Virus record (IMG/VR): IMGVR_UViG_3300044712_001255 | Coordinates: 124,001 to 188,000 of that record | Length of the DNA: 64,000 nt | Strand: one strand, 5' to 3' | Part shown: positions 1 to 20,576 of the stretch, piece by piece | Layout of the letters: each line of letters begins with the position of its first letter | Numbering within the stretch: position 1 is the stretch's first letter | The notes under the pieces: model-generated | What the model was told of the DNA's origin: nothing | The model's database searches: none | Seen by the model: only the letters and a program-made list of their open reading frames with translations | Translations under genes and position numbers: made by a program

Positions 1-1
1 C

Positions 2-1983: not shown

Positions 1984-2013
1984 CTGCACGTTGTTTTGGA
2001 GTATGGTCATAGC

Positions 2014-2940
2014 ATGCATACTCCAAGAATTTTCGTCCTCGTGCATCCAGCATACGCTGATATGATCTGTTACCCACAAACATTGAATGTGTGGGAGTCA
2101 TTTGAGCGTTGTGGCGCAATTGTCAAGTACGGCGATGATATTCATAGCATCGACCCACGGCCGGGAGACCAATTGGTGGGATATGGTCGCATGGATGATT
2201 GGCGTGTAGTTGCTGATAAGTTTCCACGTAATTGTAAGTGGAGTTACGTTGTAGACGAGTCAAGTTCATCAGTTGGAATCTACGAAAAAGCTCTTGGGTA
2301 TTTGCGTCTACTTGACATTGGCAATATGATTGTCACATATCAAAATCCAGTTCACCTTGAAAAACTGCGTTTCAACGGAATCAATTACATCATAATGCCG
2401 CAAACAATGCCGGCAATTCGTCCAAAGACTGAAAAGAAGCACGGAATTTTGCTCAGCGGTCAAGTTAGCACAAGCATTTATCCAACAAGAACAAGAGCAT
2501 GGTCTGCATTGGAACGTGGGCTAAAACGTCATGTGTATGCCCTTGAAACGCCAGGACAAGACATTTCAACGCGGCGACACAACGTTATTCGAAATGCGTA
2601 CTATGATCTGCTTGATTCGTGCAAGATGGGTATAGTGTGTAAGGCTGGAGTCAAGGATCGATTTGTTGCAAAGTACATTGAAATGGGAGCATGTCACATG
2701 CTTCCTGTTGGTGACTGTCCTTCATACATGCCAGATGAAATGAAGCGAGCTATGGTTGACATTGAAGGAATGTCTGACGTCCAAATCGTAGAAGAGGTTC
2801 GTCGTTTGCTTGAAGATGCACCAGACGAGCTCGAGGCACGTACTGCCACGTTTACGCACCAAGTGGAAAAACATTATCTAGCAACGCCCAATATGACACG
2901 AGTCATGAATGAATTAAGGGCACATGCAATGAAGGTGTAG
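2014..2940 (+). CDS. Glycosyltransferase-like protein (GT-B C-terminal half, YkvP/Glyco_trans_1_2-like)
   Basis: Y.DLLDSCKMGIVC...KYIEMGACHMLPVG resembles the K..E..A.G nucleotide-sugar-binding segment; ATG 2014 lies 6 nt after TATGGT. Confidence 0.5.
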   Translation: MHTPRIFVLVHPAYADMICYPQTLNVWESFERCGAIVKYGDDIHSIDPRPGDQLVGYGRMDDWRVVADKFPRNCKWSYVVDESSSSVGIYEKALGYLRLLDIGNMIVTYQNPVHLEKLRFNGINYIIMPQTMPAIRPKTEKKHGILLSGQVSTSIYPTRTRAWSALERGLKRHVYALETPGQDISTRRHNVIRNAYYDLLDSCKMGIVCKAGVKDRFVAKYIEMGACHMLPVGDCPSYMPDEMKRAMVDIEGMSDVQIVEEVRRLLEDAPDELEARTATFTHQVEKHYLATPNMTRVMNELRAHAMKV

Positions 2941-2963: not shown

Positions 2964-2970
2964 TGGGTCC

Positions 2971-5900
2971 ATGAGTAGTATCAATGATGGGAAAATTGCC
3001 CCGGAGTGTAGGAGGCCGACTCGTTATGTCAGCCTTCACAATCACTCCGGGGCGTCTTAGCTGCGTTCGATGGATTCGGACCAGTTGAGATTCACCTTGA
3101 GTTCTGTGTTAAGAATGGCCTCGATTGTCACGCCATAACAGAACACGGCCATATGAATAGCTACCCAGCTGCGCAGCTTCTCTCAGAAGATTGGGCAAAA
3201 AAGGGTAAAACGTTCAAATTCATCCCAGGCGTTGAGGCGTATGTTCATCCTAATCTTGATGAATGGCGTAAGCTAAAGGTCGAATCTGAAGAAGAGAAGG
3301 CGGCTAAGAAGGCGGCTAAGAAACGTGGCGAAGAAGAAGACGGCGTATCTGATGTTGACACAAATAATGCGTTAGTCGTTGAAAATGAAGACGCTACGAA
3401 ACAACGTTATCAGAATCCAGTAAACCGTCGTCACCATCTCGTATTGTTACCCAAGAACGCTCGAGGGCTCAAGAAAATCTTTGAGCTTGTCTCCTTTGGA
3501 TACATCGACGGGTTCTATCGTTTTCCCAGGATTGACCTGAGAGAGATTAAGCGAATTCAAGGTGATCAAGGCGATATCATTGCGTCGACTGCGTGCATTG
3601 GTGGTCCACTGGCGTATGAAGTCTTTGGCAAGGTGGGAGACGTAGAGTGGGACGCCATGAACGCCGATCTGTTGCGAGATGAGTTTCGTGCCAAGCAGAT
3701 CATAAATGCAATCGGTAACACATATGATCAGTACGTAGACGCCCTAGGACTGGGGAATGTGTACCTCGAGTTGCAGTTCAACAGGCTTCCGCAACAGGAC
3801 CTAGTAAACCACGCGATCATCAGGTACGCCAAGGAAAATGGCCTGACAAATCAGCTCATTGTCACCTGTGATGCCCACTATCCTGGACCAGAGATGTGGT
3901 TGTACCGCGAGATGTACAAGAAGCTAGGCCACATGAACTACGAGGAAATGGACCCCTCCAAGCTTCCTAAGTCCAAGGATGACATCAAGGCTGAACTGTA
4001 TCCTAAGAACGCGGAACAGTTGTGGTCAGAGTACCAGGCGACCAAGGGTCGATGTGATCTGTATGCCGACATGGATGATTTGGTGTGTGATGCCATCGAG
4101 CGATCGTATGACGTGGCTCATAATGTCATCGGCGATGTACCCGCAGACAAGACTCCCAAGTTCCCCAAAGCAGTTATCCCTGAAGGCAAGACAGCATTTC
4201 AAGAGCTTGTAGAGCGAGCGAAGCGTGGGCTTATTACAAAGGGCCACGATAAGAAGCCAGAATACGTGTCTCGTCTCAAGGAAGAACTGCTTGTGATGAA
4301 AGAACTTGGCATTGCTGAGTATTTCGTTACTCTTGCAAGAGTTCTTGAACTAGCTCGCACGAAGGTGCTTGTCGGAACATGTCGTGGCTCAGGTGGTGGT
4401 TCGCTTGTTGTGTATTGCCTTGGCATTACCGATGTTGATCCTGTGAAGTACGGGTTGTACTTCTCTCGATTCTTGTCAGTGTATCGTAAGGGTATGCCTG
4501 ACGTTGACATTGATATCGATGATCGCGATACTGTTCTTGATCTTTTGCGAGAGGAGTTTGGTAATACCAACGTCGTTCCCATCTCCAACTATAACTTGTT
4601 GAAGCTCAAGAGCCTCACCAAGGATGTGTGTAAGTTCTTTGGCGTTTCGTTTGAAGATGCAAACGCAGCAACACGTACCGTTGAAGATGATGTGCGTAAG
4701 GCAACATTGAAGGAGGGCGATGACAAGAATTTGTTTGAGCTCAAGTTCGATGATGCCATGAAGCATAGTCCAAGTTATCGAGCATTCATAGAGAAGCTGG
4801 CCGAAGAACACCCAGCAGCGGTAGACGCAATCAAGGCATTGTACAAGGAACAGCGTTCACTTGGGCGTCATGCTGGCGGTGTGCTTGTGGTGGATGACCT
4901 TCGCACAAAGATGCCATTGATCACTTCTGGCGGTGAACCACAGTCACCGTGGGTGGAAGGCATGGCGGTGAAGCACCTTGAGAAGGTTGGCAATTTTGTC
5001 AAGTATGATTTGCTTGGTCTTCTTACGCTTCGATTGATTCGTCGAACTGTTGAGCTTATCCTAGAGCGTAAGACTGGCCGCACGCCATCGTTTGATGAAA
5101 TCAAGGCGTATTACAATGCCCATCTACATCCCGACGTTTTGGATTTTGATGATCCCAAGGTCTATGAGTATGTTTTCCACTCTGGACGGTGGGCAGGTGT
5201 GTTCCAGTTCACCCAACGGCCAACGCAGCGATTCTGCGCTCAGTGTAAGCCAAGCAACGTGACTGACTTGGCGGCCATTACGTCAATCTGGCGTCCTGGC
5301 CCACTCGCAGGTAAGATGCATGAGCTTTACGTCGATGCAAAGTTCAATAAGCCGTATGACTGGGGTCATCCACTGTTGAATGAGACCCTTGCTGACACAT
5401 ATGGTCTGCTGATCTTTCAGGAACAGATCATGTTGCTGGCCAACAAGGTTGCAGGATATGACCTTGCAAAGTGCGATGAAGTCCGTCGAGCAATCTTGAA
5501 GCGTTCTCTTGCAACTGGCGAATCTGCTAAGAAGGAAGCTCGGGAGCTCGAAGACAGCTTTGTGAAGGGTTGCGTTGGAAATGGCGTTCCTGAATCGATT
5601 GCTCGAAAGCTATACGCAAACATCCTTGCGTGGGGTGGTTACGGCTTCAATAAGGCACACGCAACAGGGTACGCAATGATTTCATATCAGTGCGCGTACT
5701 TGATGACATATTTCGAGGAAGAGTGGCTATGTTCTTACCTCGAAAGTATGAGCAGGAGTGAGGACAACAAGGCGAAAGCTTTTAGTGAGATACGGTCATT
5801 GGGTTATCAGATTGTCCCAATTGATATCAATCATGCTTCTTTCGGTTGGACAATCCTTGACGGCAAGCGTTTCATGCCATCGTTCTTGACTTGTAAAGAC

Positions 5901-6584
5901 GTTGGATCTGCTGCCGTTGAAGAGATTGTGCGTGAGCGACCGTATGAAAAAATTCAAGATGTGCTGTGGGATGAGCAGGGAGACTGGAAGCACAGCAAGT
6001 TCAACAGCAAGGCTCTTGCTGCGCTCATAAGAATCGGTGCATTCCAAAGTCTAGATTGCATTGGCGATGATGATGAACACTTGTTTGATTCATACGCACA
6101 CATGTATGAGGTCATCATCAATCACCTGAATGATATCAAAAAGCATCCAGTCAAAGAACCCCTAAAGGGCATGAATGAATTCTACAAGCTGTCTCGTGAG
6201 CTCAAGGGTCAGATTGAGCCGTGGGACCGTCGGCAACTTGCAGAGCACAGCATCAAACACTTTGGCTCAATCGATGTAATGAACCTCATTGATCCAACTG
6301 TACTGCAAGTGTTTCAACAAAAGGGTATTTCGTCAATTGACGAGTACGATGATGCTGGCATCTATTGGTTCTGCATCACAAAGACTACGCCGAAAAAGAC
6401 GAAGAACGGTAAACACTATTTGCTTCTCGAGGCCCAAGGTCCAGGTGGTAAAACACACAAGATTTACATGTGGGGATGGGACGGCCACCGACAATTCGAA
6501 AGTTACGCAGTGTGCTTTGCCGAGTTGAAGCAAAGTGACTTTGGTTTCGGTACACAGATGAGCAAGCTCCGCGAGCTTGAGTGA
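2971..6584 (+). CDS. dnaE: DNA polymerase III alpha subunit (family C); PHP N-terminus interrupted by 5 extra nt at 3058-3062
   Basis: 2971-3057 gives YVSLHNHSGAS; 3063 onward gives AFDG...AITEHGHMN, then RGSGGGS, MPDVDID, RHAGG, RPGP, FNKAHA and a C-terminal OB fold. Confidence 0.95.
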
Positions 6585-8637: not shown

Positions 8638-9242
8638 CACTTCCTAAAGTCTGGCTGACGTCAGACACGCACTTTGGCCACGAAAACATCATCAAATATT
8701 GCAACCGACCGTTCAATGACGTGTGGCAAATGAATGTTGCGCTCACCACAATCTGGACGGGTAAGGTTACTGATGATGACATTGTCGTTCATCTTGGTGA
8801 TTTGACCTTGATGAAGGACCCAAAAAAGTACAAATCGACTTGGCAGCTTATCAGGTCTTTACCAGGTAAGAAGATACTAGTGAGAGGTAATCATGATCAC
8901 CCACGTATAGTTCCATACTTACGTGAAATTGGGTGGGTGATTGTCAATGAGATCATCTCGGAAAATGTCACAATGAGGCACATCCCGCCGACTGGAACCA
9001 GTGATGCTGACATCGTTTGTGCGCCTGATGTATTTCTACATGGGCACATCCACGGAAAGTCGCATCACAGAGATCATCCGAGTGGGAATTGCTATGATGT
9101 TGGTGTTGACGCGACGGCAGACTACGGTCCTGTGTTGCTCGATGGATTTCTAGAGGCAAAAGACCTTCCGCGAGTGAAACAAGCGTTGCTTGACATGTAC
9201 AATGCTAATGTCATCAACCCATCGGAGCACGAGAATGTTTAA
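8631..9242 (+). CDS. Calcineurin-like metallophosphoesterase
   Basis: SDTHFGH, LGD, GNHD, HGHIH motifs. Confidence 0.9.
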   Translation: MLTLPKVWLTSDTHFGHENIIKYCNRPFNDVWQMNVALTTIWTGKVTDDDIVVHLGDLTLMKDPKKYKSTWQLIRSLPGKKILVRGNHDHPRIVPYLREIGWVIVNEIISENVTMRHIPPTGTSDADIVCAPDVFLHGHIHGKSHHRDHPSGNCYDVGVDATADYGPVLLDGFLEAKDLPRVKQALLDMYNANVINPSEHENV

Positions 9243-9801
9243 ACAACACGTCATCTGCGTTGTAGGCCCAGATCGTATCGGTAAGACAACAATGGTGAAG
9301 TTGTTGTCGCATTGTTTGAACATCCCGTCATACAAGGCATCAAAGGAACAGAGTGATTTTCTAAATTCTCAAGACAAGTTCCTACAGCAACTACGACTTG
9401 CTGATCCGCGTCAGCTTGATTTGCTTGAACAGATCAAGTTTTCAATGATCATGGATCGTGGATGGGTATGCGAGTATCCCTATTCAAAGTTGTATGGTCG
9501 TAGCACTGACTTCAACCAATTGATGCAAAATGACGCGCGATACGCAGCGTTGGGTACAAAGATAGTGTTTTTGTATCGAACTTCGTACGCAGGACTTCAG
9601 GATGACTTGGATCCTACGCTTACTGACAAACGATTGCAGATCATCCATGATGGATACGAAGAATTCTTTCAAATTACGCGGTGTGAAGTTGTCAAACTTT
9701 GCGTAGATCCGCATGTTGGTGAAATGTACTATGATGAACAAGAAAAGCTCAACGAACTTATCAAGGCGTTGTTTCACACGGAGCTGATAAAAGGTGTCTG
9801 A
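9235..9801 (+). CDS. Deoxynucleoside monophosphate (thymidylate-like) kinase
   Basis: P-loop GPDRIGKTT near the N-terminus; MDRGWVCEYPY matches the dNMP-kinase DR motif. Confidence 0.7.
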   Translation: MFKQHVICVVGPDRIGKTTMVKLLSHCLNIPSYKASKEQSDFLNSQDKFLQQLRLADPRQLDLLEQIKFSMIMDRGWVCEYPYSKLYGRSTDFNQLMQNDARYAALGTKIVFLYRTSYAGLQDDLDPTLTDKRLQIIHDGYEEFFQITRCEVVKLCVDPHVGEMYYDEQEKLNELIKALFHTELIKGV

Positions 9802-10788: not shown

Positions 10789-11459
10789 CTGATAAGAATT
10801 TGACTGAGATTGTGGCTATTCTTGATCGATCCGGGTCTATGTTGGACCTGCGTGCCGATACGATTGGCGGATTCAATAGCTTCGTTGCAGAACAGCGCAA
10901 GGCTGCTGGAATTGCCAAGTTGACATTGGTGCAGTTTGATGACAAGTATCAGACTGACTATGAAGGCGTTGACATCACGGCGTCTCCATTGCTTACCGAA
11001 GAGACGTATGTTCCTCGAGGAAATACGGCACTATTTGATGCAGTTGGGTTGACTATTGCGTCTGTGGGAGAACGTCTTGCGAAGCTTGATGAGTCTCAAA
11101 GGCCGGGACAAGTAATTTTTCTGATCATCACTGATGGGCAGGAGAATGCCTCACGACTGTACAGTTCTGAGAAAGTTCAAGAGATGGTGAAGCATCAAAC
11201 GGAAGTCTATAACTGGACGTTCGTTTTCATGGGTGGTGGAGATCTGACCACGCAGACTGCGCAATCTATCGCGATGGGCATCCCTCAGACGAACTCTTAC
11301 AACTACGGTAATAACGCAGTTGGTACAAGAGCCCTGTATACCACGCTCACGAAGGGCGTATCTAAGCGCCGTGAGGAGCTCACCAGGGGTGTCATTCTGG
11401 GCGCGTGCGATGCAATGCTAGATGCAGATGACAAGGCTGAGCTCCTGAAGAGCAAGTGA
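10785..11459 (+). CDS. vWA domain protein (phage type)
   Basis: ILDRSGSM, RGNTALFDA, ITDGQENAS. Confidence 0.85.
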   Translation: MTDKNLTEIVAILDRSGSMLDLRADTIGGFNSFVAEQRKAAGIAKLTLVQFDDKYQTDYEGVDITASPLLTEETYVPRGNTALFDAVGLTIASVGERLAKLDESQRPGQVIFLIITDGQENASRLYSSEKVQEMVKHQTEVYNWTFVFMGGGDLTTQTAQSIAMGIPQTNSYNYGNNAVGTRALYTTLTKGVSKRREELTRGVILGACDAMLDADDKAELLKSK

Positions 11460-12310
11460 GGTTGAATATGAATGTGCGCCTAATTGCATTGGGTACTGGT
11501 TCTGCATTTTCAATGAAGAATTGGCAGACGAATTTCCTGCTCGAGGTGATTGAAGCTGACGGCACTACACGTAGGTTACTGATCGATTGTGGCAGTGACG
11601 TACGATTCTCGCTGCGGGACGTTGGACTGTCATACCTCGATATTGACGCAGTGTATGTTTCTCATGCGCACGCAGACCACGTCGGTGGTATGGAATACAT
11701 CGGTTTCTGCTCTTACTTTGACAGGAGATATGTTGATCGTCGAATTGGCACAAGGGACGCGCAAACGAAGCCCACCTTGTTCTGTGAGCGTAATCTTCTG
11801 CGTACGCTGTGGGATTACTCGCTTCGTGGTGGAATGGAAGGTTTAGAGGGCGTAGACGCTACAATCTCTACGTTCTTCAACCCAAAGCCTGTTGAACGCA
11901 ACAAATCATTCACCTTTGCGGGTGTTGATTTTGACATTGTGCAAAGCGTACACGTCTCAGCGAAATACTGCATTGTGGATTCATTTGGTCTGATGTTCAC
12001 CGATCCAGTGAACACCAAGCGTGTCTACATTACAACTGACGTACAGTTTGCGCCTGAAACCAGCATGATGGCGTATTACAAGGAAGCAAATGTCATCATT
12101 CATGATTGTGAAACAGCAGGATTCAAGAGTGGTGTTCATGCGCACTACGATAACCTGAAGACTCTGAAACCAGAGATCAAGAAGAAGATGCGTCTAATTC
12201 ACTATCAGGATAATGTCATTGACAATTGGGATGAGTGGAGTAAAAAGGCACTCGACGATGAGTTCCATGGGTTTACGCAAAAGGGACTGATTTACTCGAG
12301 CGAGGAATAA
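11456..12310 (+). CDS. Metallo-beta-lactamase-fold phosphodiesterase, Apyc1 (anti-Pycsar)-like
   Basis: GTGSAFS, LLIDCG, SHAHADHVGGME, LWDYSLRGG, HV, TTD, HDC, GVHAHY, HYQDN. Confidence 0.75.
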   Translation: MRLNMNVRLIALGTGSAFSMKNWQTNFLLEVIEADGTTRRLLIDCGSDVRFSLRDVGLSYLDIDAVYVSHAHADHVGGMEYIGFCSYFDRRYVDRRIGTRDAQTKPTLFCERNLLRTLWDYSLRGGMEGLEGVDATISTFFNPKPVERNKSFTFAGVDFDIVQSVHVSAKYCIVDSFGLMFTDPVNTKRVYITTDVQFAPETSMMAYYKEANVIIHDCETAGFKSGVHAHYDNLKTLKPEIKKKMRLIHYQDNVIDNWDEWSKKALDDEFHGFTQKGLIYSSEE

Positions 12311-12313
12311 AGA

Positions 12314-13603
12314 ATGAAGAGATTGTTGATTGAGACACAGTTGAGCAATTACGATACCAAGGGTAAGTTCATCCTCGAGTGCGACTCAGGCTGGCAAATG
12401 TGTCTTGGACGAGTTCGAGAAATGTTAAAGTTGAATCCACAACTTTACATTGACGTATTGGGTCCCGACCTAACGCAGTGCCGCACATTGCCACATGAAG
12501 TCAATCAAGATATTTTTGGCGATAGGGTACGTTACATACCCATGAATATCATTCCAAATGCGTTGGCAACTCGATATGATTTTGACTTTGAAGGTATTGC
12601 AAAGGTGTTGAACCTTGGGTCTGACAATGATCCCAAGTACACGCATGTCTACATCAATGACCCAATGTTGTTACGGAACTATCGAGCATTGTTCTTGCTG
12701 AAGGCGAAGTACAAGCCGTTCTTTGCCGTTCACTCACACTTCGTGGATGTGCCTGAGTGTCCCAAGTTCCCAACAGAGGCCTCACTGTGGTTGGGCCAAT
12801 GTGAAGCTGCAATTAAGGCAGACTTCAACTTTTGGCAGTGCGAGTCTGCAATGTTGCAGTTCTTTGAGTCCATGAGCAACACGTATCGGTCAGATGTTGT
12901 CAAGGCGGTTAGAGATAAGTCGTTGCCATGGGATGACGGGTATTCAAGTGCAGAGATGCATCAACCTGTGAATTACGCAAATGTTCGCTTTAATGTTGAG
13001 CAACTACGGCGTGACATTAAGGATAAGACACTTGTGTTTGTTCCCAATCGAGTAGGTGGTCGTGGTAGAAGCAGCGATTACACAAATTGTGGTAAATTTC
13101 TTTTTGATGTTGTGCCTGAGATTTGGAAGAAGCGGCGTGACTTTACAATCATCGCAGGCAATCCAAATCAGAAGTTCAACAATGATGAGCTTGTCGAACT
13201 GTGTCCAGCAGTGATGAAGGTTGTACCTGATGCATTGAATCGCGATGAGTACAAGGTAATCGCGAAGATGCACGATATAAGCGTAGGACTCTTCAATGTT
13301 GATACCTTTGGTGGGACATCGTCTAGGGAATTATTGGATATTGGTAGCATCCCATTTTGGGTTGATAACTACGAGTACTCCTCAATCGCCAAGACGGTCA
13401 ATTGGCCGAATGATTTAATGACATTGTCAGATCTCAGCGACATCGCAGTGAAATTTGAAACATTGTTGGATTGGTATCAACAAACTCAACAATTTGATTT
13501 TACGCTTTCACAATGGCATGAAAAATTTCGTGACGTTGTTCGTAAACGATGCTCTTATGAGATTACGACCAAAGAAGCAATGAAAATAATGAATTTACTA
13601 TGA
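12314..13603 (+). CDS. GT-B glycosyltransferase, candidate DNA glycosyltransferase
   Basis: Two-domain size; C-terminal DTFGGTSSRELLDIG resembles the GT-B E-x7-E signature; lies next to the epimerase. Confidence 0.6.
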   Translation: MKRLLIETQLSNYDTKGKFILECDSGWQMCLGRVREMLKLNPQLYIDVLGPDLTQCRTLPHEVNQDIFGDRVRYIPMNIIPNALATRYDFDFEGIAKVLNLGSDNDPKYTHVYINDPMLLRNYRALFLLKAKYKPFFAVHSHFVDVPECPKFPTEASLWLGQCEAAIKADFNFWQCESAMLQFFESMSNTYRSDVVKAVRDKSLPWDDGYSSAEMHQPVNYANVRFNVEQLRRDIKDKTLVFVPNRVGGRGRSSDYTNCGKFLFDVVPEIWKKRRDFTIIAGNPNQKFNNDELVELCPAVMKVVPDALNRDEYKVIAKMHDISVGLFNVDTFGGTSSRELLDIGSIPFWVDNYEYSSIAKTVNWPNDLMTLSDLSDIAVKFETLLDWYQQTQQFDFTLSQWHEKFRDVVRKRCSYEITTKEAMKIMNLL

Positions 13604-14625
13604 TTCTTGAAATCATTGAAAGATGGGTAAAAACGTCTCGCTACAAATACAAAGGCAAACGTATTTTAACGGCCTTGTATAAATGTGATGCGTGTGGAAA
13701 AATTGAAGAATTGCCTTATCGCAAAGGACGTGAAAAACATCTTCGTGTTTGTTCACCTGAGTGTGATTCTCAATTGAGAAGTCGTGGTGGTAAACTTTAC
13801 AATAACATCACATCAACAAATGTTGATAAATACGGTGAAATTTTTGCTTCAAAGACGAATCTCTGTAAAGAGAAACAACGCCAAACAAACATCGAACGAT
13901 ATGGATGTGAATCTACATCGCAAAACATAGAGGTCCAGAAAAAGAGACATTCGACGTGCATGAAACGTTATGGCGGTCCTGCCCCCACTAGTGATCCAAG
14001 GGTAAGAGAAAAGGTTCGTGCAACTTGCATTCGTAAATTTGGTGGAGGTCATTTATTGGATCCTGAACTTCGTAGACGGTTTAATAATACGATGCGATCA
14101 AAGTATGGTTGTGATTGGGCGGTACAAAACAAAGAAATACGTGCAAAACAGTATCTTACAAATATCAAACGTTATGGCGTAATAGATCCTAGACATTCTG
14201 TAGAATCAAAGAGAAAGTGTGCTTCATTAGAAGTTGCTCAAAAACGTCATGAAACTATGAAACGCAATAAATCATACGGCAAATCAAAGCCTGAAGATCG
14301 ACTCTACGAAGTGCTTTGTGAAATCTTTGGTGTGGATGATGTGGAACGTCAGAAGACAGTGGAACGTTGGCCTATCGATTTCTACGTTAAGAGCATTGAT
14401 ACGTACGTGCAATACGACAGTTACTGGCATGGCGTAGGAAGAGACATTAATGAAATCGCAGAATACAAGAACAAACGTGATGTCATGATTCACAAGAAAA
14501 TGTTGACAGACATCAAACAAAACGCGTATTTTCTAGAACATCGTTTGAAACTCGTAAGAGTGTTGGGATTACAAATACGTGAAATTACTGTTGATTCAAT
14601 TAAAACACTGATGGGGTTGCTGTGA
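13600..14625 (+). mobile_element. Putative free-standing homing endonuclease (Zn finger + KYG repeats + Vsr-like PD-(D/E)xK domain)
   Basis: CDAC..C.C, repeated (K/R)YG units, WPIDFYVKSIDTYVQYDSYWH; AT-richer than flanks; paralogue at 36254. Confidence 0.65.
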
Positions 14626-14783
14626 CAGACGAAGAAATACAAGCAGACATCGATTATTTTACCAAGTGTTTGATTGATAACTTGAAGATTCCTAAGGAGT
14701 TTTTAGGCCACATCAAAGAGACACCCAATCCTCTTACAATTGAGGAAGACTTTGTGTTAGAGACCAAGGAGAAAAAAGAATGA
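14622..14783 (+). CDS. 53-aa ORF missing from the ORF track; resembles a portal-protein segment
   Basis: GTG 14622 to TGA 14783 with GTGA/ATGA overlaps on both sides; MTDEEIQADIDYFTKCLIDNLKIPKEFLGH... Confidence 0.55.
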   Translation: MTDEEIQADIDYFTKCLIDNLKIPKEFLGHIKETPNPLTIEEDFVLETKEKKE

Positions 14784-15736
14784 CAACTCGTGTGCTTATC
14801 ACAGGCGGTGCAGGTTTCATCGGTAGTAATCTCGCAAAGCGATGTGTAGATGAAGGATTTGAAGTCACCATTGTCGATGATATGTCGAATGGTCACGAAG
14901 AGTTTGTGCCAAAGGGCGTCAAACAGTTCTATAAGTGTGATTTCACTGCGCCTGCAGTGATGATAGACATTGCATTACAAAAATTTGATCTTGTGTTTCA
15001 CGTCGCTGCGCTCCCTCGAGTGAGCTACTCAGTTGAGCATCCCATAGAGACAAATGACGTCAATGTGACGAAGTCTCTTAGATTGATCAATGCATGTCGC
15101 GGTAATGTGAAGCGAATTGTTTTTTCAAGTTCATCTTCAGTGTACGGCGGCGCAGATGAGTTGCCTACACATGAGTCTGCCCCATTTCGTCCCAAGTCTC
15201 CCTATGCTCTGCAGAAGGCAATCATTGAGCAGTACCTCAGGCTCTACAACGAGACGTATGAGTTGGAGTCGTGTTGCCTGCGTTACTTCAATGTATTTGG
15301 GAAAAATCAATTAGGATCTTCGCCATACGCAACAGCTGTTTCTGCGTGGCTCACGGCTATCAAGCAAGGCAAGCCTATGCGTTCGGACGGTGATGGCACA
15401 CAGAGCCGAGATATGTGTCATGTAGACAATGTTGTTGAAGCCAATGTCCTAGCTGCAAAGTCGACTAAGGACCTACGAGGTCGTGCGTACAATGTCGCAT
15501 GCGGTGACAGGACAACCAACAATCAGATCCTTGAATATCTGAAGATGAGATATCCAGCAGCCACGAGCTACAACGCGCCTTACAGGGTGGGTGATGTGAT
15601 GCATACCCAGGCCGATATCTCTCGTATCAAAGAAGAATTGGGATACGAGGTACAGGTAAGATTCTTTGATGGCCTTGAGAGGACCATTGAATGGTATGAG
15701 ACGTCTGAGCTTGCGAAGTTAGCGTTGAAGGTGTGA
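14780..15736 (+). CDS. NAD-dependent NDP-sugar epimerase/dehydratase (extended SDR)
   Basis: TGGAGFIGS, SSSSVYG, YALQK (YxxxK), RYFNVFG. Confidence 0.92.
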   Translation: MTTRVLITGGAGFIGSNLAKRCVDEGFEVTIVDDMSNGHEEFVPKGVKQFYKCDFTAPAVMIDIALQKFDLVFHVAALPRVSYSVEHPIETNDVNVTKSLRLINACRGNVKRIVFSSSSSVYGGADELPTHESAPFRPKSPYALQKAIIEQYLRLYNETYELESCCLRYFNVFGKNQLGSSPYATAVSAWLTAIKQGKPMRSDGDGTQSRDMCHVDNVVEANVLAAKSTKDLRGRAYNVACGDRTTNNQILEYLKMRYPAATSYNAPYRVGDVMHTQADISRIKEELGYEVQVRFFDGLERTIEWYETSELAKLALKV

Positions 15737-15737
15737 A

Positions 15738-16286
15738 ATGACTTGTATTATCGGAATTGAACACAATGGGCGTTGTTACGTCGGTGGCGATTCAGCAGGA
15801 ATTTCAAATTATGACGTCACCATCAGGCGTGATGAGAAGGTGTTCACGAACGGCGAATTCGTAATAGGATTTACGTCATCGTTCAGAATGGGCCAAATCC
15901 TACGTTACAGGTTTGATCCACCAAAGCATCATCCCGACCAAGACGTTATGGAATACATGGTTGTCAATTTCATAGATGCTGTGAGGGAAACATTCAAGGC
16001 ATCAGGGTGGACTCCACAAGAAGATACATCAAAGGGTATTGAATGTAGCGGTACGTTCATAGTCGGCTATAAAGGGCGCATTTTTGAGATTGAAGGTGAT
16101 CTTCAGGTATCATCTCCTTCATGTGGAATTGCAACTTGTGGATGTGGCTATGCGCTTGCCCTTGGAGCAATGGACGCATTGTCAGAATACGAACATGACG
16201 TTGAAAACCGTATCAAAAAAGCATTGTCAATTGTGGCAAAGCGAAATTGCGGCGTGCATGCGCCGTTCATCGTAAAGAGCGTGTAG
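15738..16286 (+). CDS. Ntn-hydrolase, HslV/proteasome-beta-like protease 1
   Basis: N-terminal MTCIIG, GDS, K at about position 33, CGCG in the GSG position. Confidence 0.7.
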   Translation: MTCIIGIEHNGRCYVGGDSAGISNYDVTIRRDEKVFTNGEFVIGFTSSFRMGQILRYRFDPPKHHPDQDVMEYMVVNFIDAVRETFKASGWTPQEDTSKGIECSGTFIVGYKGRIFEIEGDLQVSSPSCGIATCGCGYALALGAMDALSEYEHDVENRIKKALSIVAKRNCGVHAPFIVKSV

Positions 16287-16314: not shown

Positions 16315-16860
16315 ATGACGTGCATTGTTGGTGTTGTGTATGGAAAGAACGTTTGGCTCGGCGGCGATAGGGCTGCGACGTCTGGTAATCTCAATAGGAC
16401 AATCATCAAAGATCCAAAGGTGTTCGTGAAAGAGAACATTGGATTTGGTGTGTGCGGATTGCCAAAGGTGATGGACACACTGCAATATCACATTGAGATT
16501 CCTGTGTACAATGGCGAAAACGTAAAGACGTATCTTGTGTCATCTGTCATTCCTGCAATTCGCAGTGGGCTCAAGGCGATGGACTGTACGGTTCACCACG
16601 AAGGACAAGATTATTTTGAGGGAGCGATGTTGGTCGCTTTCAATGGTCGTCTCTTTGAACTCGAAGCAAATTTCCAGCTTGTAGAATCAAGCAAGGGGTT
16701 CAATGCAGTTGGATCCGGTGCTGAACCCGCATTGGGGTCGCTAAGGGCAACAAAGGGCAATCCACGAACTCGTCTGCTTCAGGCTTTGCAAACGTCTGCC
16801 GAGAACAATGCAGGCGTGGCTCCACCTTTTGATGTGATTGAGATCAAGCGACAGAAATAA
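16315..16860 (+). CDS. Ntn-hydrolase, HslV/proteasome-beta-like protease 2
   Basis: MTCIVG, GDR, PKVF, AVGSG. Confidence 0.75.
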   Translation: MTCIVGVVYGKNVWLGGDRAATSGNLNRTIIKDPKVFVKENIGFGVCGLPKVMDTLQYHIEIPVYNGENVKTYLVSSVIPAIRSGLKAMDCTVHHEGQDYFEGAMLVAFNGRLFELEANFQLVESSKGFNAVGSGAEPALGSLRATKGNPRTRLLQALQTSAENNAGVAPPFDVIEIKRQK

Positions 16861-17896: not shown

Positions 17897-18898
17897 ATGG
17901 AGCACAACTACCAATCGTTTACGACAGCATACGCAGGACTGATTAAGGATGTTTACGAGAATCCTGATTTTGTATGTGCTCCACGCGGGCAGAAGATCAA
18001 GGAGAAGTTGGGTGTCAAGTTTGTCATCCAGAATCCACGAGCTCGATTGCCATTCATCAAGGAACGTAAGTTCTCTGTTGCGTATGTGATAGCTGAGGCG
18101 TTGTGGTATCTCAGCGGTAACAACAGCACTGAATGGATCTCTTACTATTCGAAGTTCTGGCGTGACATCAGCGACGATGGCGTAACTGCAAATTCAGCGT
18201 ATGGCGCTAGAATTTTCAAGCCACATTCTCGATCTGGCGCGTTGTCCCATGATGATGGGTGGACGCAGTGGAACTGGCTGATTGATGAGCTAGCGGCAGA
18301 CAACGACTCTCGTAGGGCCGTCGTGCACATCAGGAGCCCTCTCGATTCTCGATTGGCCAAGAAGGATGTACCCTGCACGCTGACCCTTCAATTTTTTCTG
18401 AGGGATGACAAGGTGCATCAGGTCGTCTCTATGAGGTCTTCTGACCTCGTCTTGGGCATCGCTAACGACATTCCGGCGTTTACGATTTTCCAAGAGCTCT
18501 TGGCGTTGGACCTCACTGAACGTTTGAAGCGTCCCATCGGATTGGGAACATATACACACGTCAGTAACTCTTTGCACATTTACGAGAGGAACTTTACGTT
18601 GGTGGAGTCTATCATCAATACGACTGAAGATCTGACGAAATACGATGATGAGTCATACGCCATGCCCGCCATGCCAAGCAAGCCTCCGTTGGTAGATCTC
18701 AATTGTCATGAATCAATGATTCGAGTTGCGACAGCAGGTGTACGATTGACGCACGCCAACTATCGTACTTCAGATCCATACTGGCGAGATTGGCAGACGA
18801 TCTTAGCACGTCATCGTTGTCAGAAGTGGGATATTGACTGTAATTTTGACGTTCTTGGTGGGATCAATTGGCCACACTACGGATTCTTTGAGGAGTGA
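17897..18898 (+). CDS. Thymidylate-synthase-family enzyme with dCMP hydroxymethylase (T4 gp42-like) signature
   Basis: NSAYG, DVPCTLTLQF, MRSSDLVLGIANDIPAF (Asp at the ThyA Asn177-equivalent position), SLHIYERNF. Confidence 0.75.
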   Translation: MEHNYQSFTTAYAGLIKDVYENPDFVCAPRGQKIKEKLGVKFVIQNPRARLPFIKERKFSVAYVIAEALWYLSGNNSTEWISYYSKFWRDISDDGVTANSAYGARIFKPHSRSGALSHDDGWTQWNWLIDELAADNDSRRAVVHIRSPLDSRLAKKDVPCTLTLQFFLRDDKVHQVVSMRSSDLVLGIANDIPAFTIFQELLALDLTERLKRPIGLGTYTHVSNSLHIYERNFTLVESIINTTEDLTKYDDESYAMPAMPSKPPLVDLNCHESMIRVATAGVRLTHANYRTSDPYWRDWQTILARHRCQKWDIDCNFDVLGGINWPHYGFFEE

Positions 18899-18899
18899 T

Positions 18900-19502
18900 A
18901 TGACATGTGTAGTTGGCTACAAAGATGGCGATGCCATCTATCTTGGGTCTGACAGCTACGTGGGTAGCGTCGAAAATGGCATTCAACATGTCCTGGCAAA
19001 TCCAGAGAAGATCTTTCAAACGGGACAGTTCTTGATTGGTGTCGCGGGTAGCATGCGCATCGGTCAACTTCTTCACCACGGTCTACGCGTCGCAAAGCAG
19101 AGACGTGGTGATTCAGATCAAAAGTACTTAGTGATCAATGTGATGAGTGCCATCAGGTCTTTGTTACAGGAACACTGTCAGTGGGGCTCCGCAGAAGATG
19201 ATTCCGAAGTGGGCATGATGTATGACACTGATTTGATCCTAGCCTACAAGAATCAAATCTACATGATCGACGTAGACCTGCAAGTACAGCAGATCGTAGG
19301 AAACTATGTCTGCATCGGCTCCGGCCGCGAGGTGGCCAATGGTGCTATGTTCGCTTTTGAAAATGGCGATGTTGCAGAAGTAGCTGTATCAGCTCCCGAC
19401 CGCATAAAACTTGCGCTTCAGGCGGCAACGCACCATCAATCTGGTATTTTGCCGCCTTACCATATCATGCAGCTCAAGAACGGTATAGTTTCTAAGGTAT
19501 GA
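18900..19502 (+). CDS. Ntn-hydrolase, HslV/proteasome-beta-like protease 3
   Basis: MTCVVG, SDS, EKIF, CIGSG. Confidence 0.7.
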   Translation: MTCVVGYKDGDAIYLGSDSYVGSVENGIQHVLANPEKIFQTGQFLIGVAGSMRIGQLLHHGLRVAKQRRGDSDQKYLVINVMSAIRSLLQEHCQWGSAEDDSEVGMMYDTDLILAYKNQIYMIDVDLQVQQIVGNYVCIGSGREVANGAMFAFENGDVAEVAVSAPDRIKLALQAATHHQSGILPPYHIMQLKNGIVSKV

Positions 19503-20080
19503 AGTTGCCGATGCAAAATCCTCAATTTATTGTCTATTGTGGTCCAATGTGGTCGGCAAAGACAACGTCTATGTTGCTTCGCCTTGAACGTTTTGAGTTA
19601 CAAGGACGAAAAGTTAAGCTGTTCAAACCAAATATCGATGAACGATATGATGCAAAGTTTGAAGTTGTAACTCACTCTGGGTGGAAACGTGCCGCAGTGC
19701 CTATCAAGAATGCGGTTGATATCCTCAAAGAGATTGAGAATGATCCACCCGAAGTGATTGCGCTCGACGAAGCGTTCATGGTGAAGGATAGCCATAAGGT
19801 ATTGGTGTGGTTATTCAAGACAGGAGTGACTATTGTAGTCTCGAGCCTTGATTTGAGTTTTAAGGGAGTACCTTTCAAAGAAGTTGAAAAGATGCTGTCA
19901 TGGGCGACGGAGGTGCATAAGTGCGCTGCCGTTTGCAAGGCATGTGGTTCTGACGCATTCTACACATATCGTAAGAATGATGACAACGAAGATATCATAG
20001 TGGGTGGTGCTGAGCTCTATGAGAGTAGGTGTTTCAGGTGTCATCCCATCATTGACGAGAGACCTGGTGACTATGAGTGA
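19499..20080 (+). CDS. tdk: Thymidine kinase
   Basis: GPMWSAKTT, LDEAF, CxxC...Y..RCxxC. Confidence 0.88.
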   Translation: MKLPMQNPQFIVYCGPMWSAKTTSMLLRLERFELQGRKVKLFKPNIDERYDAKFEVVTHSGWKRAAVPIKNAVDILKEIENDPPEVIALDEAFMVKDSHKVLVWLFKTGVTIVVSSLDLSFKGVPFKEVEKMLSWATEVHKCAAVCKACGSDAFYTYRKNDDNEDIIVGGAELYESRCFRCHPIIDERPGDYE

Positions 20081-20576
20081 GATACAACGTCCTACTTGGC
20101 CACAAAAGTGGATGAACATCGCCAGAGAAATTTCTGAGATGTCTTATGATTCGCGCTTGAAAGTTGGCGCAATTATCGTCCCAGTTGACAATACTGGCAT
20201 ACTTTCATTGGGATTCAACGGCAATGCTCACGGCCTTCCCAACAAACGTGACAGCGAAGAAGAGGGCAAGGCGGGTTTCATTCACGCAGAGCAAAATTGT
20301 TTCTATAAACTTGATTATCGACACCCATCACAGAAGGTTCTATACGTTCTCTATTCGCCTTGTCCTGAATGCGCAAAAGGCGCAATACAGTGTAAGATAA
20401 ACAGAGTTGTTTATGATAAACCTTTTCGAGATACGCGTGGTATAGACATTCTGAATATGGGCGGAATCGAAGTGTACACGCTCGATGAAGCGATATTCCT
20501 GGCGCAACAAGGCATCTGGGGAGATGAACATTGTAAGGTAGATCGCAAGGTCGCGCTGACAAGTTTACGTCCATAG
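20073..20576 (+). CDS. dCMP deaminase
   Basis: KVGAII, GFNG, HAEQN, SPCPECAK. Confidence 0.9.
   Translation: MSEIQRPTWPQKWMNIAREISEMSYDSRLKVGAIIVPVDNTGILSLGFNGNAHGLPNKRDSEEEGKAGFIHAEQNCFYKLDYRHPSQKVLYVLYSPCPECAKGAIQCKINRVVYDKPFRDTRGIDILNMGGIEVYTLDEAIFLAQQGIWGDEHCKVDRKVALTSLRP

What the first reader, a model, noticed from the sequence alone, without database searches (positions are those of the whole stretch)
12314..15736. Glycosyltransferases plus NDP-sugar epimerase: possible non-glucose DNA hypermodification
Seen: a GT-B-like gene next to an extended-SDR epimerase, and a second GT-like gene directly before dnaE (2014). Known: T-even phages glucosylate hmC using host UDP-glucose, and some use other sugars. 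Inference: a phage-encoded epimerase suggests a dedicated sugar donor and possibly an uncharacterised base. Protein or capsid glycosylation is an alternative.
Basis: inference. Interest (0 to 1): 0.6.

Follow-up and report, generated by a model that had tools for sequence, protein, structure and literature searches.

The report
Jumbo-phage hmC DNA glycosylation module
A 324-kb uncultured soil phage carries, among its DNA-replication genes, what looks like a complete pathway for replacing cytosine with hydroxymethylcytosine and then attaching a sugar that the phage tailors itself, probably not glucose.

Summary
12314-13603 encodes a 429-aa protein with no sequence-family hit. Its confident model (pLDDT 93.5) is a GT-B/GT4-like glycosyltransferase (Z 28.9 to BshA). 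14780-15736 is an extended-SDR UDP-sugar 4-epimerase. 2014-2940, just before dnaE, is a second compact GT-B. The two main genes are not strictly adjacent, because a homing-endonuclease gene (13600-14625) sits between them.

The DNA-modification reading is well supported by context:
- A thymidylate-synthase homologue 2.2 kb downstream (17897-18898) matches T4 dCMP hydroxymethylase gp42 at 12 diagnostic residues.
- Just upstream of the window lie ThyX, a dTMP-kinase-like gene, a gp56-like dCTPase candidate and a clear UDP-glucuronate decarboxylase (UXS).
- The order kinase, GT, epimerase, hydroxymethylase recurs in about 30 related metagenomic jumbo-phage loci.
- The hydroxymethylase subtype, and in more distant relatives the GT family, are swapped while the slot is kept.

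A separate classical glycan island at the contig ends is the better candidate for protein or envelope glycosylation.

The sugar is unresolved: a pentose made by UXS plus the epimerase, or Gal/GalNAc. Nothing has been tested chemically. I rate it a new variant of a known kind, of moderate interest.

The parts
2014..2940 (+). GT2: compact GT-B glycosyltransferase (308 aa), lineage-specific accessory transferase. In relatives it sits directly downstream of UXS.
   Evidence: No Pfam, PHROG or NCBIfam hit. 39 homologues. AF2 pLDDT 92.1. Foldseek/VIA: GT-B, Z 19.1 to PimA and Z 17.8 to T4 AGT. Absent from 5 long relatives. Adjacent to UXS in L067 and L077-L079.
3153..6584 (+). DnaE-type DNA polymerase III alpha: replication context and synteny anchor.
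   Evidence: PF07733, PF17657, PF02811, PF14579. Conserved upstream of the module in relatives.
9235..9801 (+). P-loop kinase (AAA_28/dNK-like), candidate hm-dCMP (nucleotide) kinase. The ORF as listed starts at TTG 9190; ATG 9235 fits the family alignment.
   Evidence: Weak PF13521 hit. A 22-sequence profile hits deoxynucleoside kinase 2jas (E 2.5e-4) and YorR 2axp/3kb2 (E 0.019). Always 0.5-4 kb upstream of the GT in relatives.
12314..13603 (+). GT1: GT-B/GT4-like glycosyltransferase of a new sequence family, proposed 5-hmC DNA glycosyltransferase.
   Evidence: no sequence-family hit; 426 homologues; pLDDT 93.5; MshA/BshA, Z 28.9; linked to a dCMP hydroxymethylase in 29 of 30 related loci.
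13600..14625 (+). Homing endonuclease gene inserted between GT1 and the epimerase; a mobile element, not part of the pathway.
   Evidence: PF24308 DUF7487 at E 3e-21; phrog_3339 homing endonuclease at E 5e-18. Absent at this position in L009, where GT1 and the epimerase abut.
14622..14783 (+). 53-aa ORF of unknown status, lying within the inserted segment between the endonuclease gene and the epimerase.
   Evidence: ORF list. Only a sub-threshold Pfam hit. Not followed up.
14780..15736 (+). Extended-SDR UDP-sugar 4-epimerase, proposed to make the donor sugar for GT1.
   Evidence: PF01370 at E 2e-57. PDB 6dnt at 6e-55, WbgU 7e-51, WbpP 6e-47. The Ser/Tyr/Lys triad is conserved, and Thr is invariant at the E. 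coli GalE Tyr299 position in 28 orthologues.
17897..18898 (+). Thymidylate-synthase homologue with the dCMP hydroxymethylase signature; proposed to make 5-hm-dCMP.
   Evidence: MilA at 3e-40 and T4 gp42 at 7e-16. E58, R126, R127, D143, C146, T147, R166, S167, D169, D177, H207 and Y209 are identical to T4 gp42 and invariant in 30 homologues. It is the only ThyA-type gene in the contig; ThyX is present elsewhere.
19499..20080 (+). Thymidine kinase: pyrimidine-precursor context.
   Evidence: PF00265 at E 1e-39. Syntenic in relatives.
20004..20576 (+). dCMP deaminase: pyrimidine-precursor context. The listed GTG start overlaps the TK gene, so the true start may be later.
   Evidence: PF00383 at E 9e-16. 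Syntenic in relatives.

Best explanation
The region is the core of a T4-style, pre-replicative cytosine-replacement and glycosylation pathway in an uncultured rhizosphere jumbo phage.

Proposed steps:
1. A gp56-like pyrophosphatase turns dCTP into dCMP (inferred).
2. The thymidylate-synthase homologue at 17897-18898 hydroxymethylates dCMP. This rests on its residue signature.
3. P-loop kinases (9235-9801 and/or the dTMP-kinase-like gene upstream of the window) plus host NDP kinase make hm-dCTP (inferred).
4. The phage DnaE polymerase incorporates hm-dC.
5. After replication, GT1 (12314-13603) transfers a sugar from a UDP-sugar onto the hydroxymethyl group. The fold is shown; the acceptor is inferred. 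If GT1 follows GT4 chemistry, transfer occurs with retention of configuration.
6. The donor sugar is tailored by phage enzymes: UXS (UDP-GlcA to UDP-xylose, 0.45 kb upstream of the window) and the 4-epimerase at 14780-15736.

The most economical scheme is UDP-GlcA to UDP-Xyl to UDP-L-Ara to GT1. In that scheme GT2 (2014-2940), which sits next to UXS in relatives, acts as an accessory xylosyl-type transferase. UDP-GalNAc or UDP-Gal as the epimerase product is about equally possible.

ThyX, thymidine kinase and dCMP deaminase keep thymidylate supply separate from this pathway. The expected benefit to the phage is evasion of restriction and CRISPR nucleases.
For: (1) Folds. GT1 and GT2 are confident GT-B models. 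GT1's best PDB matches (BshA, MshA, sucrose-phosphate synthase 6kih) are the ones reported for the proven DNA arabinosyltransferases of phages DLP3 and RB69 (PMC13326640, Table 1).

(2) Hydroxymethylase. The residue signature is identical to T4 gp42 at 12 positions. It is Asp at ThyA-177, meaning cytosine rather than uracil. It is Asp, not Asn, at ThyA-169, so not a 5-hydroxy-dCMP synthase (PMC13326640 sec. 28). It has Ser167 and Arg126, meaning deoxyribo rather than ribo (PMC5175136).

(3) Rest of the pathway. ThyX at E 2e-36, a dTMP-kinase-like gene at 1e-12, and a gp56-like gene (dUTPase_2 at 27.3 bits, above the cut-off; phmmer with T4 gp56 at 1.5e-5). The kinase profile resembles dNK/YorR.

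(4) UXS matches human UXS1 at E 5e-87. Orthologues are present in 13 of 15 related records.

(5) Synteny. 29 of 30 related loci have a gp42-signature thymidylate-synthase homologue within about 4 kb of GT1, and 27 of 30 have the epimerase. The linkage survives gene-order changes (GT1, hydroxymethylase, epimerase in L019, L021 and L037) and swapping among three hydroxymethylase subtypes, one of them about 50% identical to T4 gp42. In more distant relatives GT1 is replaced by an unrelated Glyco_trans_1_2 protein beside the same kinase and hydroxymethylase.

(6) Gene packing. The genes are tightly packed or overlapping on one strand within the replication and nucleotide-metabolism module.

(7) Precedent. 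Phage glycosyltransferases whose action on 5hmC needs a partner epimerase have been shown experimentally (bioRxiv 10.1101/2023.12.21.572611).
Against: - No chemical or expression data exist. The genome is a metagenomic contig (86% complete by CheckV), and no RNA run holds it.
- A GT-B fold does not identify the acceptor. GT1's closest solved relatives act on small molecules or lipids.
- The GT1 family is acidic (median pI 5.7, against 9.05 for T4 BGT), so bulk charge gives no hint of DNA binding.
- GT1 has no sequence relationship to T4 AGT/BGT or to the RB69 arabinosyltransferase.
- The loci compared are related phages, so conserved synteny is partly inherited rather than independent evidence.
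- The genome and its relatives also carry a classical glycan island that could consume the UXS or epimerase products.
- The dCTPase and kinase assignments are weak.
- The epimerase's nearest characterised relatives act on UDP-GlcNAc, not UDP-xylose, so the pentose route is only one option.
Confidence: 0.65

Rival explanations
1. The DNA does contain hmC and GT1 glycosylates it, but with an ordinary host donor such as UDP-glucose or UDP-GlcNAc. The epimerase and UXS serve the phage's separate glycan island, or simply reshape the host sugar-nucleotide pool.
For: - T4 uses host UDP-glucose without any sugar enzyme of its own (established knowledge).
- The genome has a large glycan island with GT4, GT2, Gmd, PseB-like, DegT and UGD-like genes that needs sugar nucleotides, and relatives have one too.
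- Three related loci (L033, L035, L036) keep GT1 and the hydroxymethylase without an epimerase nearby.
Against: - The epimerase sits between or beside GT1 and the hydroxymethylase in 27 of 30 loci. It stays next to the hydroxymethylase even where GT1 is replaced by another glycosyltransferase.
- The glycan island has its own SDR enzymes.
- UXS is kept in the replication module, not in the island.
Confidence: 0.15
2. GT1, GT2, the epimerase and UXS glycosylate proteins (virion or other) or a host envelope glycan. Their position beside nucleotide-metabolism genes is only inherited gene order.
For: - GT4-like enzymes usually act on lipids, proteins or small molecules.
- The best viral structural matches are Arthrobacter phage glycosyltransferases of unknown acceptor.
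- GT1 is acidic.
- The synteny evidence comes from related phages.
Against: - The GT slot next to the kinase and hydroxymethylase is preserved through non-orthologous replacement of both the glycosyltransferase and the hydroxymethylase. Inheritance alone does not explain that.
- These genes lie far from the structural genes and from the classical glycan island.
- No lipid-carrier, flippase or secretion genes adjoin them.
Confidence: 0.12
3. The module makes a free modified nucleoside or nucleotide, as in mildiomycin biosynthesis: a MilA-type CMP hydroxymethylase plus a glycosyltransferase using a UDP-glucuronate-derived sugar. DNA is not modified.
For: - The best overall PDB hit of the thymidylate-synthase homologue is MilA (E 3e-40).
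- UXS consumes UDP-glucuronate, the donor used in that antibiotic family (own knowledge).
- GT1's closest folds act on small acceptors.
Against: - The ribose-specificity residues are the deoxy type: Ser167 and Arg126, against Ala176 and Lys133 in MilA (PMC5175136).
- In many relatives the same slot holds a protein about 50% identical to T4 gp42.
- A dCTPase candidate, ThyX, TK, dCMP deaminase and kinases surround it.
- No MilB-like N-glycosidase was seen among the scanned neighbours.
Confidence: 0.03

Closest known systems
T-even phage hmC pathway: gp56 dCTPase, gp42 dCMP hydroxymethylase, gp1 kinase, alpha/beta-glucosyltransferases
   Same: - A pre-replicative route through a ThyA-fold dCMP hydroxymethylase with the same 12 diagnostic residues.
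- A gp56-like pyrophosphatase candidate and nucleotide kinases.
- GT-B-fold transferases encoded next to the hydroxymethylase, as b-gt sits next to gene 42 in T4.
- A dCMP deaminase, and an N6-adenine methylase elsewhere in the genome.
   Different: - The glycosyltransferases share no detectable sequence similarity with AGT or BGT. GT1 is GT4-like.
- The phage encodes its own sugar-nucleotide enzymes (a 4-epimerase and UXS), so the sugar is probably not glucose.
- The polymerase is DnaE-type and thymidylate comes from ThyX.
- The genome is a 324-kb jumbo phage.
Epimerase-dependent 5hmC glycosylation clusters of the metavirome (subclass II clusters; bioRxiv 10.1101/2023.12.21.572611)
   Same: A glycosyltransferase is paired with a nucleotide-sugar epimerase that supplies a non-default donor. 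The products there were Hex-, HexNAc- or HexA-5hmC. That paper's metagenome mining also notes glycosyltransferases near thymidylate synthases and epimerases.
   Different: - Those clusters make 5hmC after replication, using a methyltransferase plus a TET-like dioxygenase, and the epimerase-dependent transferases are GT-A.
- Here the base is made before replication by a ThyA homologue and the transferases are GT-B.
- A UXS is an additional conserved partner.
- A search for TET/JBP in this genome found nothing, but the control also failed, so that result is uninformative.
Arabinosyl-5-hydroxycytosine systems of RB69, DLP3 and HY126 (PMC13326640)
   Same: A ThyA homologue, a nucleotide kinase, GT4-like GT-B transferases (same best PDB matches) and phage-encoded synthesis of a UDP-pentose, all clustered near the DNA polymerase gene.
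   Different: - The diagnostic D169N change of 5-hydroxy-dCMP synthases is absent here (Asp is retained), so the base should be 5-hmC, not 5-hoC.
- The donor route differs: UXS plus a 4-epimerase would give xylose or L-arabinopyranose. Those phages instead use an arabinose-5-P isomerase, kinase/pyrophosphorylase and phosphatase to give D-arabinofuranose.
- There is no sequence similarity to the RB69 Aat protein.
Bacterial UDP-xylose / UDP-L-arabinose pathway (UXS plus UDP-xylose 4-epimerase, e.g. in Sinorhizobium meliloti; own knowledge)
   Same: The phage UXS is 52% identical to the S. meliloti pSymB homologue, and it co-occurs with an extended-SDR 4-epimerase.
   Different: I could not retrieve a characterised UDP-xylose 4-epimerase for comparison. 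The phage epimerase's nearest solved relatives are UDP-GlcNAc 4-epimerases. The proposed acceptor, DNA, is unprecedented for this pathway.

Membership tests
dCMP hydroxymethylase (T4 gp42 type, ThyA superfamily) | ThyA fold with the catalytic Cys146 and Glu58 (E. coli ThyA numbering) | tested here: met
   PF00303 at E 1.5e-21. Cys and Glu are aligned and invariant in 30 homologues.
dCMP hydroxymethylase (T4 gp42 type, ThyA superfamily) | Asp instead of Asn at ThyA-177 (cytosine rather than uracil substrate) | tested here: met
   Asp in the window protein and in all 29 neighbours. ThyA and SPO1 gp29 have Asn.
dCMP hydroxymethylase (T4 gp42 type, ThyA superfamily) | Ser167 and Arg126 (deoxyribose preference; MilA has Ala and Lys) | tested here: met
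   Ser and Arg are invariant in 30 of 30. The criterion is from PMC5175136.
dCMP hydroxymethylase (T4 gp42 type, ThyA superfamily) | Enzymatic conversion of dCMP to 5-hm-dCMP | not testable with these tools
   Needs an enzyme assay or in-vivo LC-MS.
5-hydroxy-dCMP synthase (RB69 gp48 / DLP3 gp80 type) | Asn replacing Asp at ThyA-169 (D169N) | tested here: not met
   Asp is retained in the window protein and in all 29 neighbours. RB69 gp48 shows Asn in the same alignment. The criterion is from PMC13326640 sec. 28.
GT-B glycosyltransferase, GT4-like (retaining) | Two Rossmann-like domains with a C-terminal helix crossing back | tested here: met
   GT1: Z 28.9 to BshA and 27.2 to MshA, covering residues 1-429. 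GT2: Z 19.1 to PimA, covering 4-308.
GT-B glycosyltransferase, GT4-like (retaining) | Sequence membership (Pfam Glycos_transf_1 / EX7E motif) | tested here: inconclusive
   No Pfam hit at E <= 0.01. By eye, GT1 has invariant D330-x8-E339 within FGG...RE, where GT4 enzymes have E-x7-E.
T4 alpha- or beta-glucosyltransferase families | Sequence homology to AGT or BGT | tested here: not met
   No Pfam family hit for GT1 or GT2. phmmer with T4 BGT finds nothing in the genome at E <= 1. Only fold-level similarity: GT2 to AGT at Z 17.8, and to BGT at Foldseek E 3e-6.
DNA (5-hmC) glycosyltransferase, functional class | Transfers a sugar to hmC in duplex DNA | not testable with these tools
   Only context supports it. 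Bulk charge gives no support.
UDP-hexose 4-epimerase (GalE/WbpP/WbgU extended SDR) | GxxGxxG NAD site and Ser/Tyr/Lys catalytic residues | tested here: met
   GGAGFIGS is present, and S/Y/K align with E. coli GalE S124/Y149/K153 in 28 orthologues.
UDP-hexose 4-epimerase (GalE/WbpP/WbgU extended SDR) | Substrate class, set partly by the residue at the GalE Tyr299 position | tested here: inconclusive
   Thr is invariant there. It is a small residue, like Ser in WbgU, and so compatible with N-acetylated or other substrates (bioRxiv 10.1101/2020.09.22.308395). It does not name the sugar.
UDP-glucuronate decarboxylase (UXS) | Close full-length homology to characterised UXS | tested here: met
   E 4.9e-87 over residues 2-324 to human UXS1 (4gll, 2b69). 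The next family scores at 1e-31.
T4 gp56-type dCTPase | All-alpha NTP pyrophosphatase homologous to gp56 | tested here: inconclusive
   A 124-aa ORF at G000:C1:110438-110812. phmmer with T4 gp56 gives E 1.5e-5 against the genome's ORFs. PF08761 scores 27.3 bits (cut-off 22.9) but covers only the C-terminal part.

The most novel reading that the evidence does not exclude
A widespread clade of uncultured soil and groundwater jumbo phages replaces cytosine with a pentosylated 5-hydroxymethylcytosine (L-arabinosyl- and/or xylosyl-hmC). The donor would be made by a route not known for DNA modification: UDP-glucuronate decarboxylase followed by a UDP-xylose 4-epimerase. Transfer would be by a glycosyltransferase family that no profile library recognises. 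This would be a new DNA base and a new use of the UDP-xylose pathway.
Probability: 0.3. Interest if true: 0.75.

Novelty: new variant of a known kind. Interest (0 to 1): 0.55.

Why it matters
Glycosylated cytosines are a main way for phages to escape restriction enzymes and CRISPR nucleases, and they in turn select for type IV restriction and DNA-glycosylase defences. Almost all known chemistry comes from T4-like coliphages and a few expressed metagenomic clusters.

- This module would extend the pre-replicative hmC strategy to a large, uncultured jumbo-phage lineage with hundreds of metagenomic homologues.
- It adds a glycosyltransferase family that current profile libraries miss.
- It links DNA modification to UDP-xylose metabolism.
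- It gives a concrete enzyme set (hydroxymethylase, GT1, epimerase, UXS, GT2) that can be expressed in E. coli and read out by nucleoside mass spectrometry.
- Possible practical uses are new DNA-glycosylating enzymes for 5hmC labelling, and better prediction of modified genomes from sequence.

Tried and rejected
- Sequence-family searches for GT1 and GT2 (Pfam, PHROGs, NCBIfam, PDB sequences) gave nothing. Only structure prediction resolved them.
- tblastn of GT1 and GT2, and megablast of the region, against 50,697 phage records gave no match. There is no cultured relative to lean on.
- hhalign of the GT1 family against the GT2 family gave probability 0.2, so they are not detectably related.
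- The 5-hydroxycytosine (RB69-type) reading is rejected, because Asp169 is retained.
- The ribonucleotide (MilA-type) reading is rejected, because Ser167 and Arg126 are present.
- The dUMP hydroxymethylase or true thymidylate synthase reading is rejected, because residue 177 is Asp, residue 143 is Asp, and a ThyX is present.
- A six-frame search for MazG (PF03819) in the genome was negative. A direct phmmer search with T4 gp56 found a candidate.
- The Tet_JBP search was empty, but its control was empty too, so it is uninformative.
- No NTP_transferase (sugar-1-P nucleotidyltransferase) was found.
- I tried to fetch the characterised S. meliloti UDP-xylose 4-epimerase through the pSymB UXS hit. 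No epimerase lay within 4 kb of that hit, so I dropped it.
- Bulk charge of GT1 as a hint of DNA binding: the protein is acidic, so there is no support.
- Sequencing runs: only two DNA runs from rhizosphere metagenomes and no RNA. I did not use read laying, because contigs cannot show expression or modification.
- I did not use complex prediction or the large representative search, as no claim depended on them.
- No alternative genetic code was used.

Full report
**1. What is there**

The window is bases 124001-188000 of a single 324,468-bp viral contig: GC 0.47, linear, 86% complete by CheckV. It comes from a rhizosphere metagenome. Almost all genes in the first 30 kb are on the + strand and are tightly packed or overlapping.

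Within the finding's coordinates there are four ORFs:
- 12314-13603 (429 aa, GT1).
- 13600-14625 (341 aa).
- 14622-14783 (53 aa).
- 14780-15736 (318 aa, the epimerase).

It is followed by dnaE at 3153-6584.

**2. The two glycosyltransferases**

Neither protein matches any Pfam, PHROG or NCBIfam profile or any PDB sequence. Both are nevertheless real, conserved genes:
- GT1 has 426 metagenomic homologues, many on contigs of 200-370 kb.
- GT2 has 39 homologues.

AlphaFold2 models built on alignments of these homologues are confident: pLDDT 93.5 and 92.1, pTM 0.90 for both.

GT1 is a full-length GT-B fold of the GT4 type:
- Foldseek gives E 8e-14 to MshA.
- VIA-align gives Z 28.9 (rmsd 3.5, 353 residues) to BshA, 27.2 to MshA and 27.2 to sucrose-phosphate synthase 6kih.
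- These are the same structures reported as best matches for the proven DNA arabinosyltransferases of phages DLP3 and RB69 (PMC13326640, Table 1). They are generic GT4 representatives, though, and do not identify the acceptor.

GT2 is a compact GT-B:
- Z 19.1 to PimA and Z 17.8 to T4 alpha-glucosyltransferase bound to DNA (1y8z).
- Foldseek also lists T4 beta-glucosyltransferase and the phage HY126 DNA glycosyltransferase.

The two families are unrelated at sequence level. Neither has a counterpart in 50,697 deposited phage genomes.

**3. The epimerase and the inserted gene**

The 318-aa protein is an extended SDR (PF01370, E 2e-57).
- Its nearest solved relatives are UDP-GlcNAc/GalNAc 4-epimerases: 6dnt at 6e-55, WbgU at 7e-51, WbpP at 6e-47.
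- It keeps the NAD motif and the Ser/Tyr/Lys triad.
- At the position of E. coli GalE Tyr299, whose side-chain size influences acceptance of N-acetylated substrates, it has Thr. This Thr is invariant in all 28 phage orthologues.

This makes it a credible UDP-sugar 4-epimerase with a roomy pocket, but it does not name the sugar.

The gene between GT1 and the epimerase is a homing endonuclease (DUF7487, phrog_3339). In close relatives GT1 and the epimerase abut, or other small inserts sit there.

**4. The evidence that decides the interpretation: the neighbours**

*The hydroxymethylase.* A thymidylate-synthase homologue lies 2.2 kb downstream (17897-18898).
- Its best PDB hits are the CMP hydroxymethylase MilA (3e-40) and T4 dCMP hydroxymethylase (7e-16), ahead of true thymidylate synthases.
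- I aligned it with E. coli ThyA, T4 gp42, RB69 gp48 and SPO1 gp29, all taken from annotated records.
- It matches T4 gp42 at all 12 positions examined: E58, R126, R127, D143, C146, T147, R166, S167, D169, D177, H207, Y209.
- Asp177 indicates a cytosine substrate; ThyA and the SPO1 dUMP hydroxymethylase have Asn there.
- Asp169 excludes the 5-hydroxy-dCMP synthases, which carry Asn (PMC13326640).
- Ser167 and Arg126 indicate deoxyribose, unlike MilA's Ala and Lys (PMC5175136).
- It is the only ThyA-type gene in the contig.

*The rest of the pathway.* Thymidylate is covered by a ThyX 15 kb upstream (G000:C1:108782-109456, E 2e-36). Next to ThyX are a dTMP-kinase-like gene and a 124-aa gp56-like pyrophosphatase candidate. 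Thymidine kinase and dCMP deaminase follow the hydroxymethylase. A P-loop kinase (9235-9801) upstream of GT1 weakly resembles deoxynucleoside kinases and YorR.

Together these amount to a T4-like set for excluding dCTP, making hm-dCTP and glycosylating the product.

**5. A second sugar-nucleotide enzyme**

An ORF ends 448 nt before the window start (G000:C1:122572-123552). It is an unambiguous UDP-glucuronate decarboxylase: E 5e-87 to human UXS1, with the next family at 1e-31.
- Orthologues at 46-64% identity lie upstream of dnaE in 13 of 15 related records examined, and in further loci.
- Wherever GT2 occurs in relatives, it lies immediately downstream of UXS: L067, which is the G006 contig, and L077-L079.
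- GT2 is absent from five long relatives, three of them at least 91% complete, that still keep UXS, GT1 and the epimerase.

*Inference.* UXS feeds GT2 where GT2 is present. Because UXS is retained without GT2, its product is probably also used through the epimerase, as UDP-Xyl to UDP-L-Ara for GT1. This is parsimony, not proof. UDP-GalNAc or UDP-Gal as the epimerase product, and use of UDP-xylose elsewhere, remain open.

**6. Comparative test of the linkage**

I collected 29 IMG/VR loci with the GT1 profile and added one groundwater contig.
- 29 of these 30 loci have a gp42-signature thymidylate-synthase homologue within about 4 kb of GT1. The remaining contig ends too early to tell.
- 27 of the 30 have the epimerase.
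- The usual order is DnaE, kinase, GT1, epimerase, hydroxymethylase, HslV-like, TK, dCMP deaminase, SOD.

These phages are related, so shared order alone is weak evidence. Three features go beyond inheritance:
- The order is rearranged in a subclade (GT1, hydroxymethylase, epimerase in L019, L021, L037), yet the genes stay together.
- Three different hydroxymethylase subtypes occupy the slot. One is about 50% identical to T4 gp42. All carry the same signature.
- In more distant relatives found with the kinase profile (L086-L089, L091), GT1 is missing. An unrelated ~350-aa protein with a Glyco_trans_1_2 domain (E 4e-7 to 8e-3) instead flanks the same kinase, next to the hydroxymethylase and usually an epimerase.

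A slot that keeps 'a GT-B plus a dCMP hydroxymethylase' while both occupants change argues for a functional module.

**7.

The contig ends hold a classical glycan island on the minus strand, at roughly G000:C1:304.5-324.4 kb and 1-6 kb. It contains:
- five Glycos_transf_1 and two Glycos_transf_2 genes;
- GDP-mannose 4,6-dehydratase;
- a PseB-like dehydratase;
- a DegT aminotransferase;
- a UDP-glucose-dehydrogenase-like gene.

Relatives have 3-6 GT4 genes away from the replication module. This island is the natural candidate for protein, virion or envelope glycosylation. It shows that the phage separates that function from the module studied here.

It is also a caveat. The island could draw on UXS or epimerase products, and its dehydrogenase-like gene could supply UDP-glucuronate to UXS.

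**8. Weak points**

- There is no chemistry, no expression data, and no cultured relative.
- A GT-B fold does not reveal the acceptor.
- The GT1 family is acidic (median pI 5.7, against 9.05 for T4 BGT).
- The dCTPase and kinase assignments are marginal.
- The sugar is not determined.
- I could not obtain a characterised UDP-xylose 4-epimerase for comparison.

**9. Relation to the known**

The logic is that of T-even phages, and b-gt likewise sits next to gene 42 in T4. Here, however, the transferases are unrelated to AGT and BGT, and the phage tailors its own donor.
- Epimerase-dependent glycosylation of 5hmC has been shown for TET-type, post-replicative clusters with GT-A enzymes. That study's metagenome mining noted GT-B genes near thymidylate synthases and epimerases (bioRxiv 10.1101/2023.12.21.572611).
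- Pentose-modified cytosines are known as arabinosyl-5-hydroxycytosine, made by a different base-forming enzyme and a different sugar route (PMC13326640).
- I found no report of a UXS-plus-epimerase route to DNA glycosylation.

I therefore class this as a new variant of a known kind.

**10. Verdict**

- Confidence is 0.65 that GT1 glycosylates hmC in DNA with a phage-tailored sugar.
- Probability is about 0.3 that the sugar is a pentose made via UXS and the epimerase.
- Interest is 0.55.

Noticed in passing
window 13600-14625 (and L052:6333-7256, minus strand): A DUF7487 homing-endonuclease gene splits the GT1-epimerase pair. A second copy of the family sits in the glycan island. In relatives the GT1-epimerase gap holds inserts of 0 to about 2.8 kb, so it looks like an insertion hotspot.
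   Followed up: partly
window 11456-12310: A metallo-beta-lactamase-fold protein matches the anti-Pycsar nuclease Apyc1 (PF23023, E 3e-23, above the cut-off). It lies immediately upstream of GT1 and is a candidate cyclic-nucleotide-degrading counter-defence gene. In relative L002 an Acb2/Tad1-hairpin protein occupies the position just before GT1.
   Followed up: no
window 15738-16286, 16315-16860 and 18834-19502: Two tandem HslV-like peptidase genes (phrog_1040) and a third weak proteasome-like ORF sit between the epimerase and the TK gene. They are conserved in most relatives, a phage-encoded proteasome-like set of unknown role.
   Followed up: no
G000:C1:~304500-324468 and 1-6000 (outside the window; loci L051, L052): A large minus-strand glycan-biosynthesis island spans the contig ends. 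It holds GDP-mannose 4,6-dehydratase, a PseB-like dehydratase, a DegT aminotransferase, a short UDP-glucose-dehydrogenase-like gene, at least five GT4 and two GT2 genes, and a PD-(D/E)XK nuclease. It is probably for glycosylating a protein or envelope component.
   Followed up: partly
G000:C1:122572-123552 (L038:18572-19552), 448 nt before the window: A UDP-glucuronate decarboxylase (UXS) matches human UXS1 at E 5e-87. Homologues are rare in cultured phages (10 records, including Pseudomonas phage QdP_Psa3 and some cyanophages).
   Followed up: yes
G000:C1:108782-110812 (L038:4782-6812): A cluster of ThyX, a dTMP-kinase-like gene and a gp56-like dUTPase_2 gene. Nearby are a C39 peptidase, a polynucleotide kinase-phosphatase plus RNA ligase (a T4-like RNA repair pair), an N6/N4 DNA methylase and a Dps-like protein.
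   Followed up: partly
related loci L009, L013, L016, L017, L023, L024, L029, L030, L033, L037: The DnaE polymerase gene is split into two or three ORFs in many relatives. Intervening genes, probably mobile endonucleases or inteins, separate the pieces. It is intact in this window.
   Followed up: no
related loci L086-L089, L091 (e.g. L086:10525-11559, L091:6717-7772): A third, unrelated GT-B family (~350 aa, Glyco_trans_1_2) replaces GT1 beside the kinase and hydroxymethylase. L086 and L087 also carry an extra SDR next to it.
   Followed up: partly
related loci, e.g. L002:13567-14328 versus L009:12747-13778 versus L024:14494-15336: Three length and sequence subtypes of dCMP hydroxymethylase occupy the same genomic slot in different relatives: about 250 aa and gp42-like, about 335 aa and MilA-like with a C-terminal extension, and about 280 aa.
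   Followed up: partly
window 814-1926 and 10773-11459; 21113-21838; 24340-25908: Two von Willebrand A-domain proteins flank the module. An Fe/Mn superoxide dismutase is conserved downstream. A 522-aa protein has a weak sigma-70 region 4 match.
   Followed up: no
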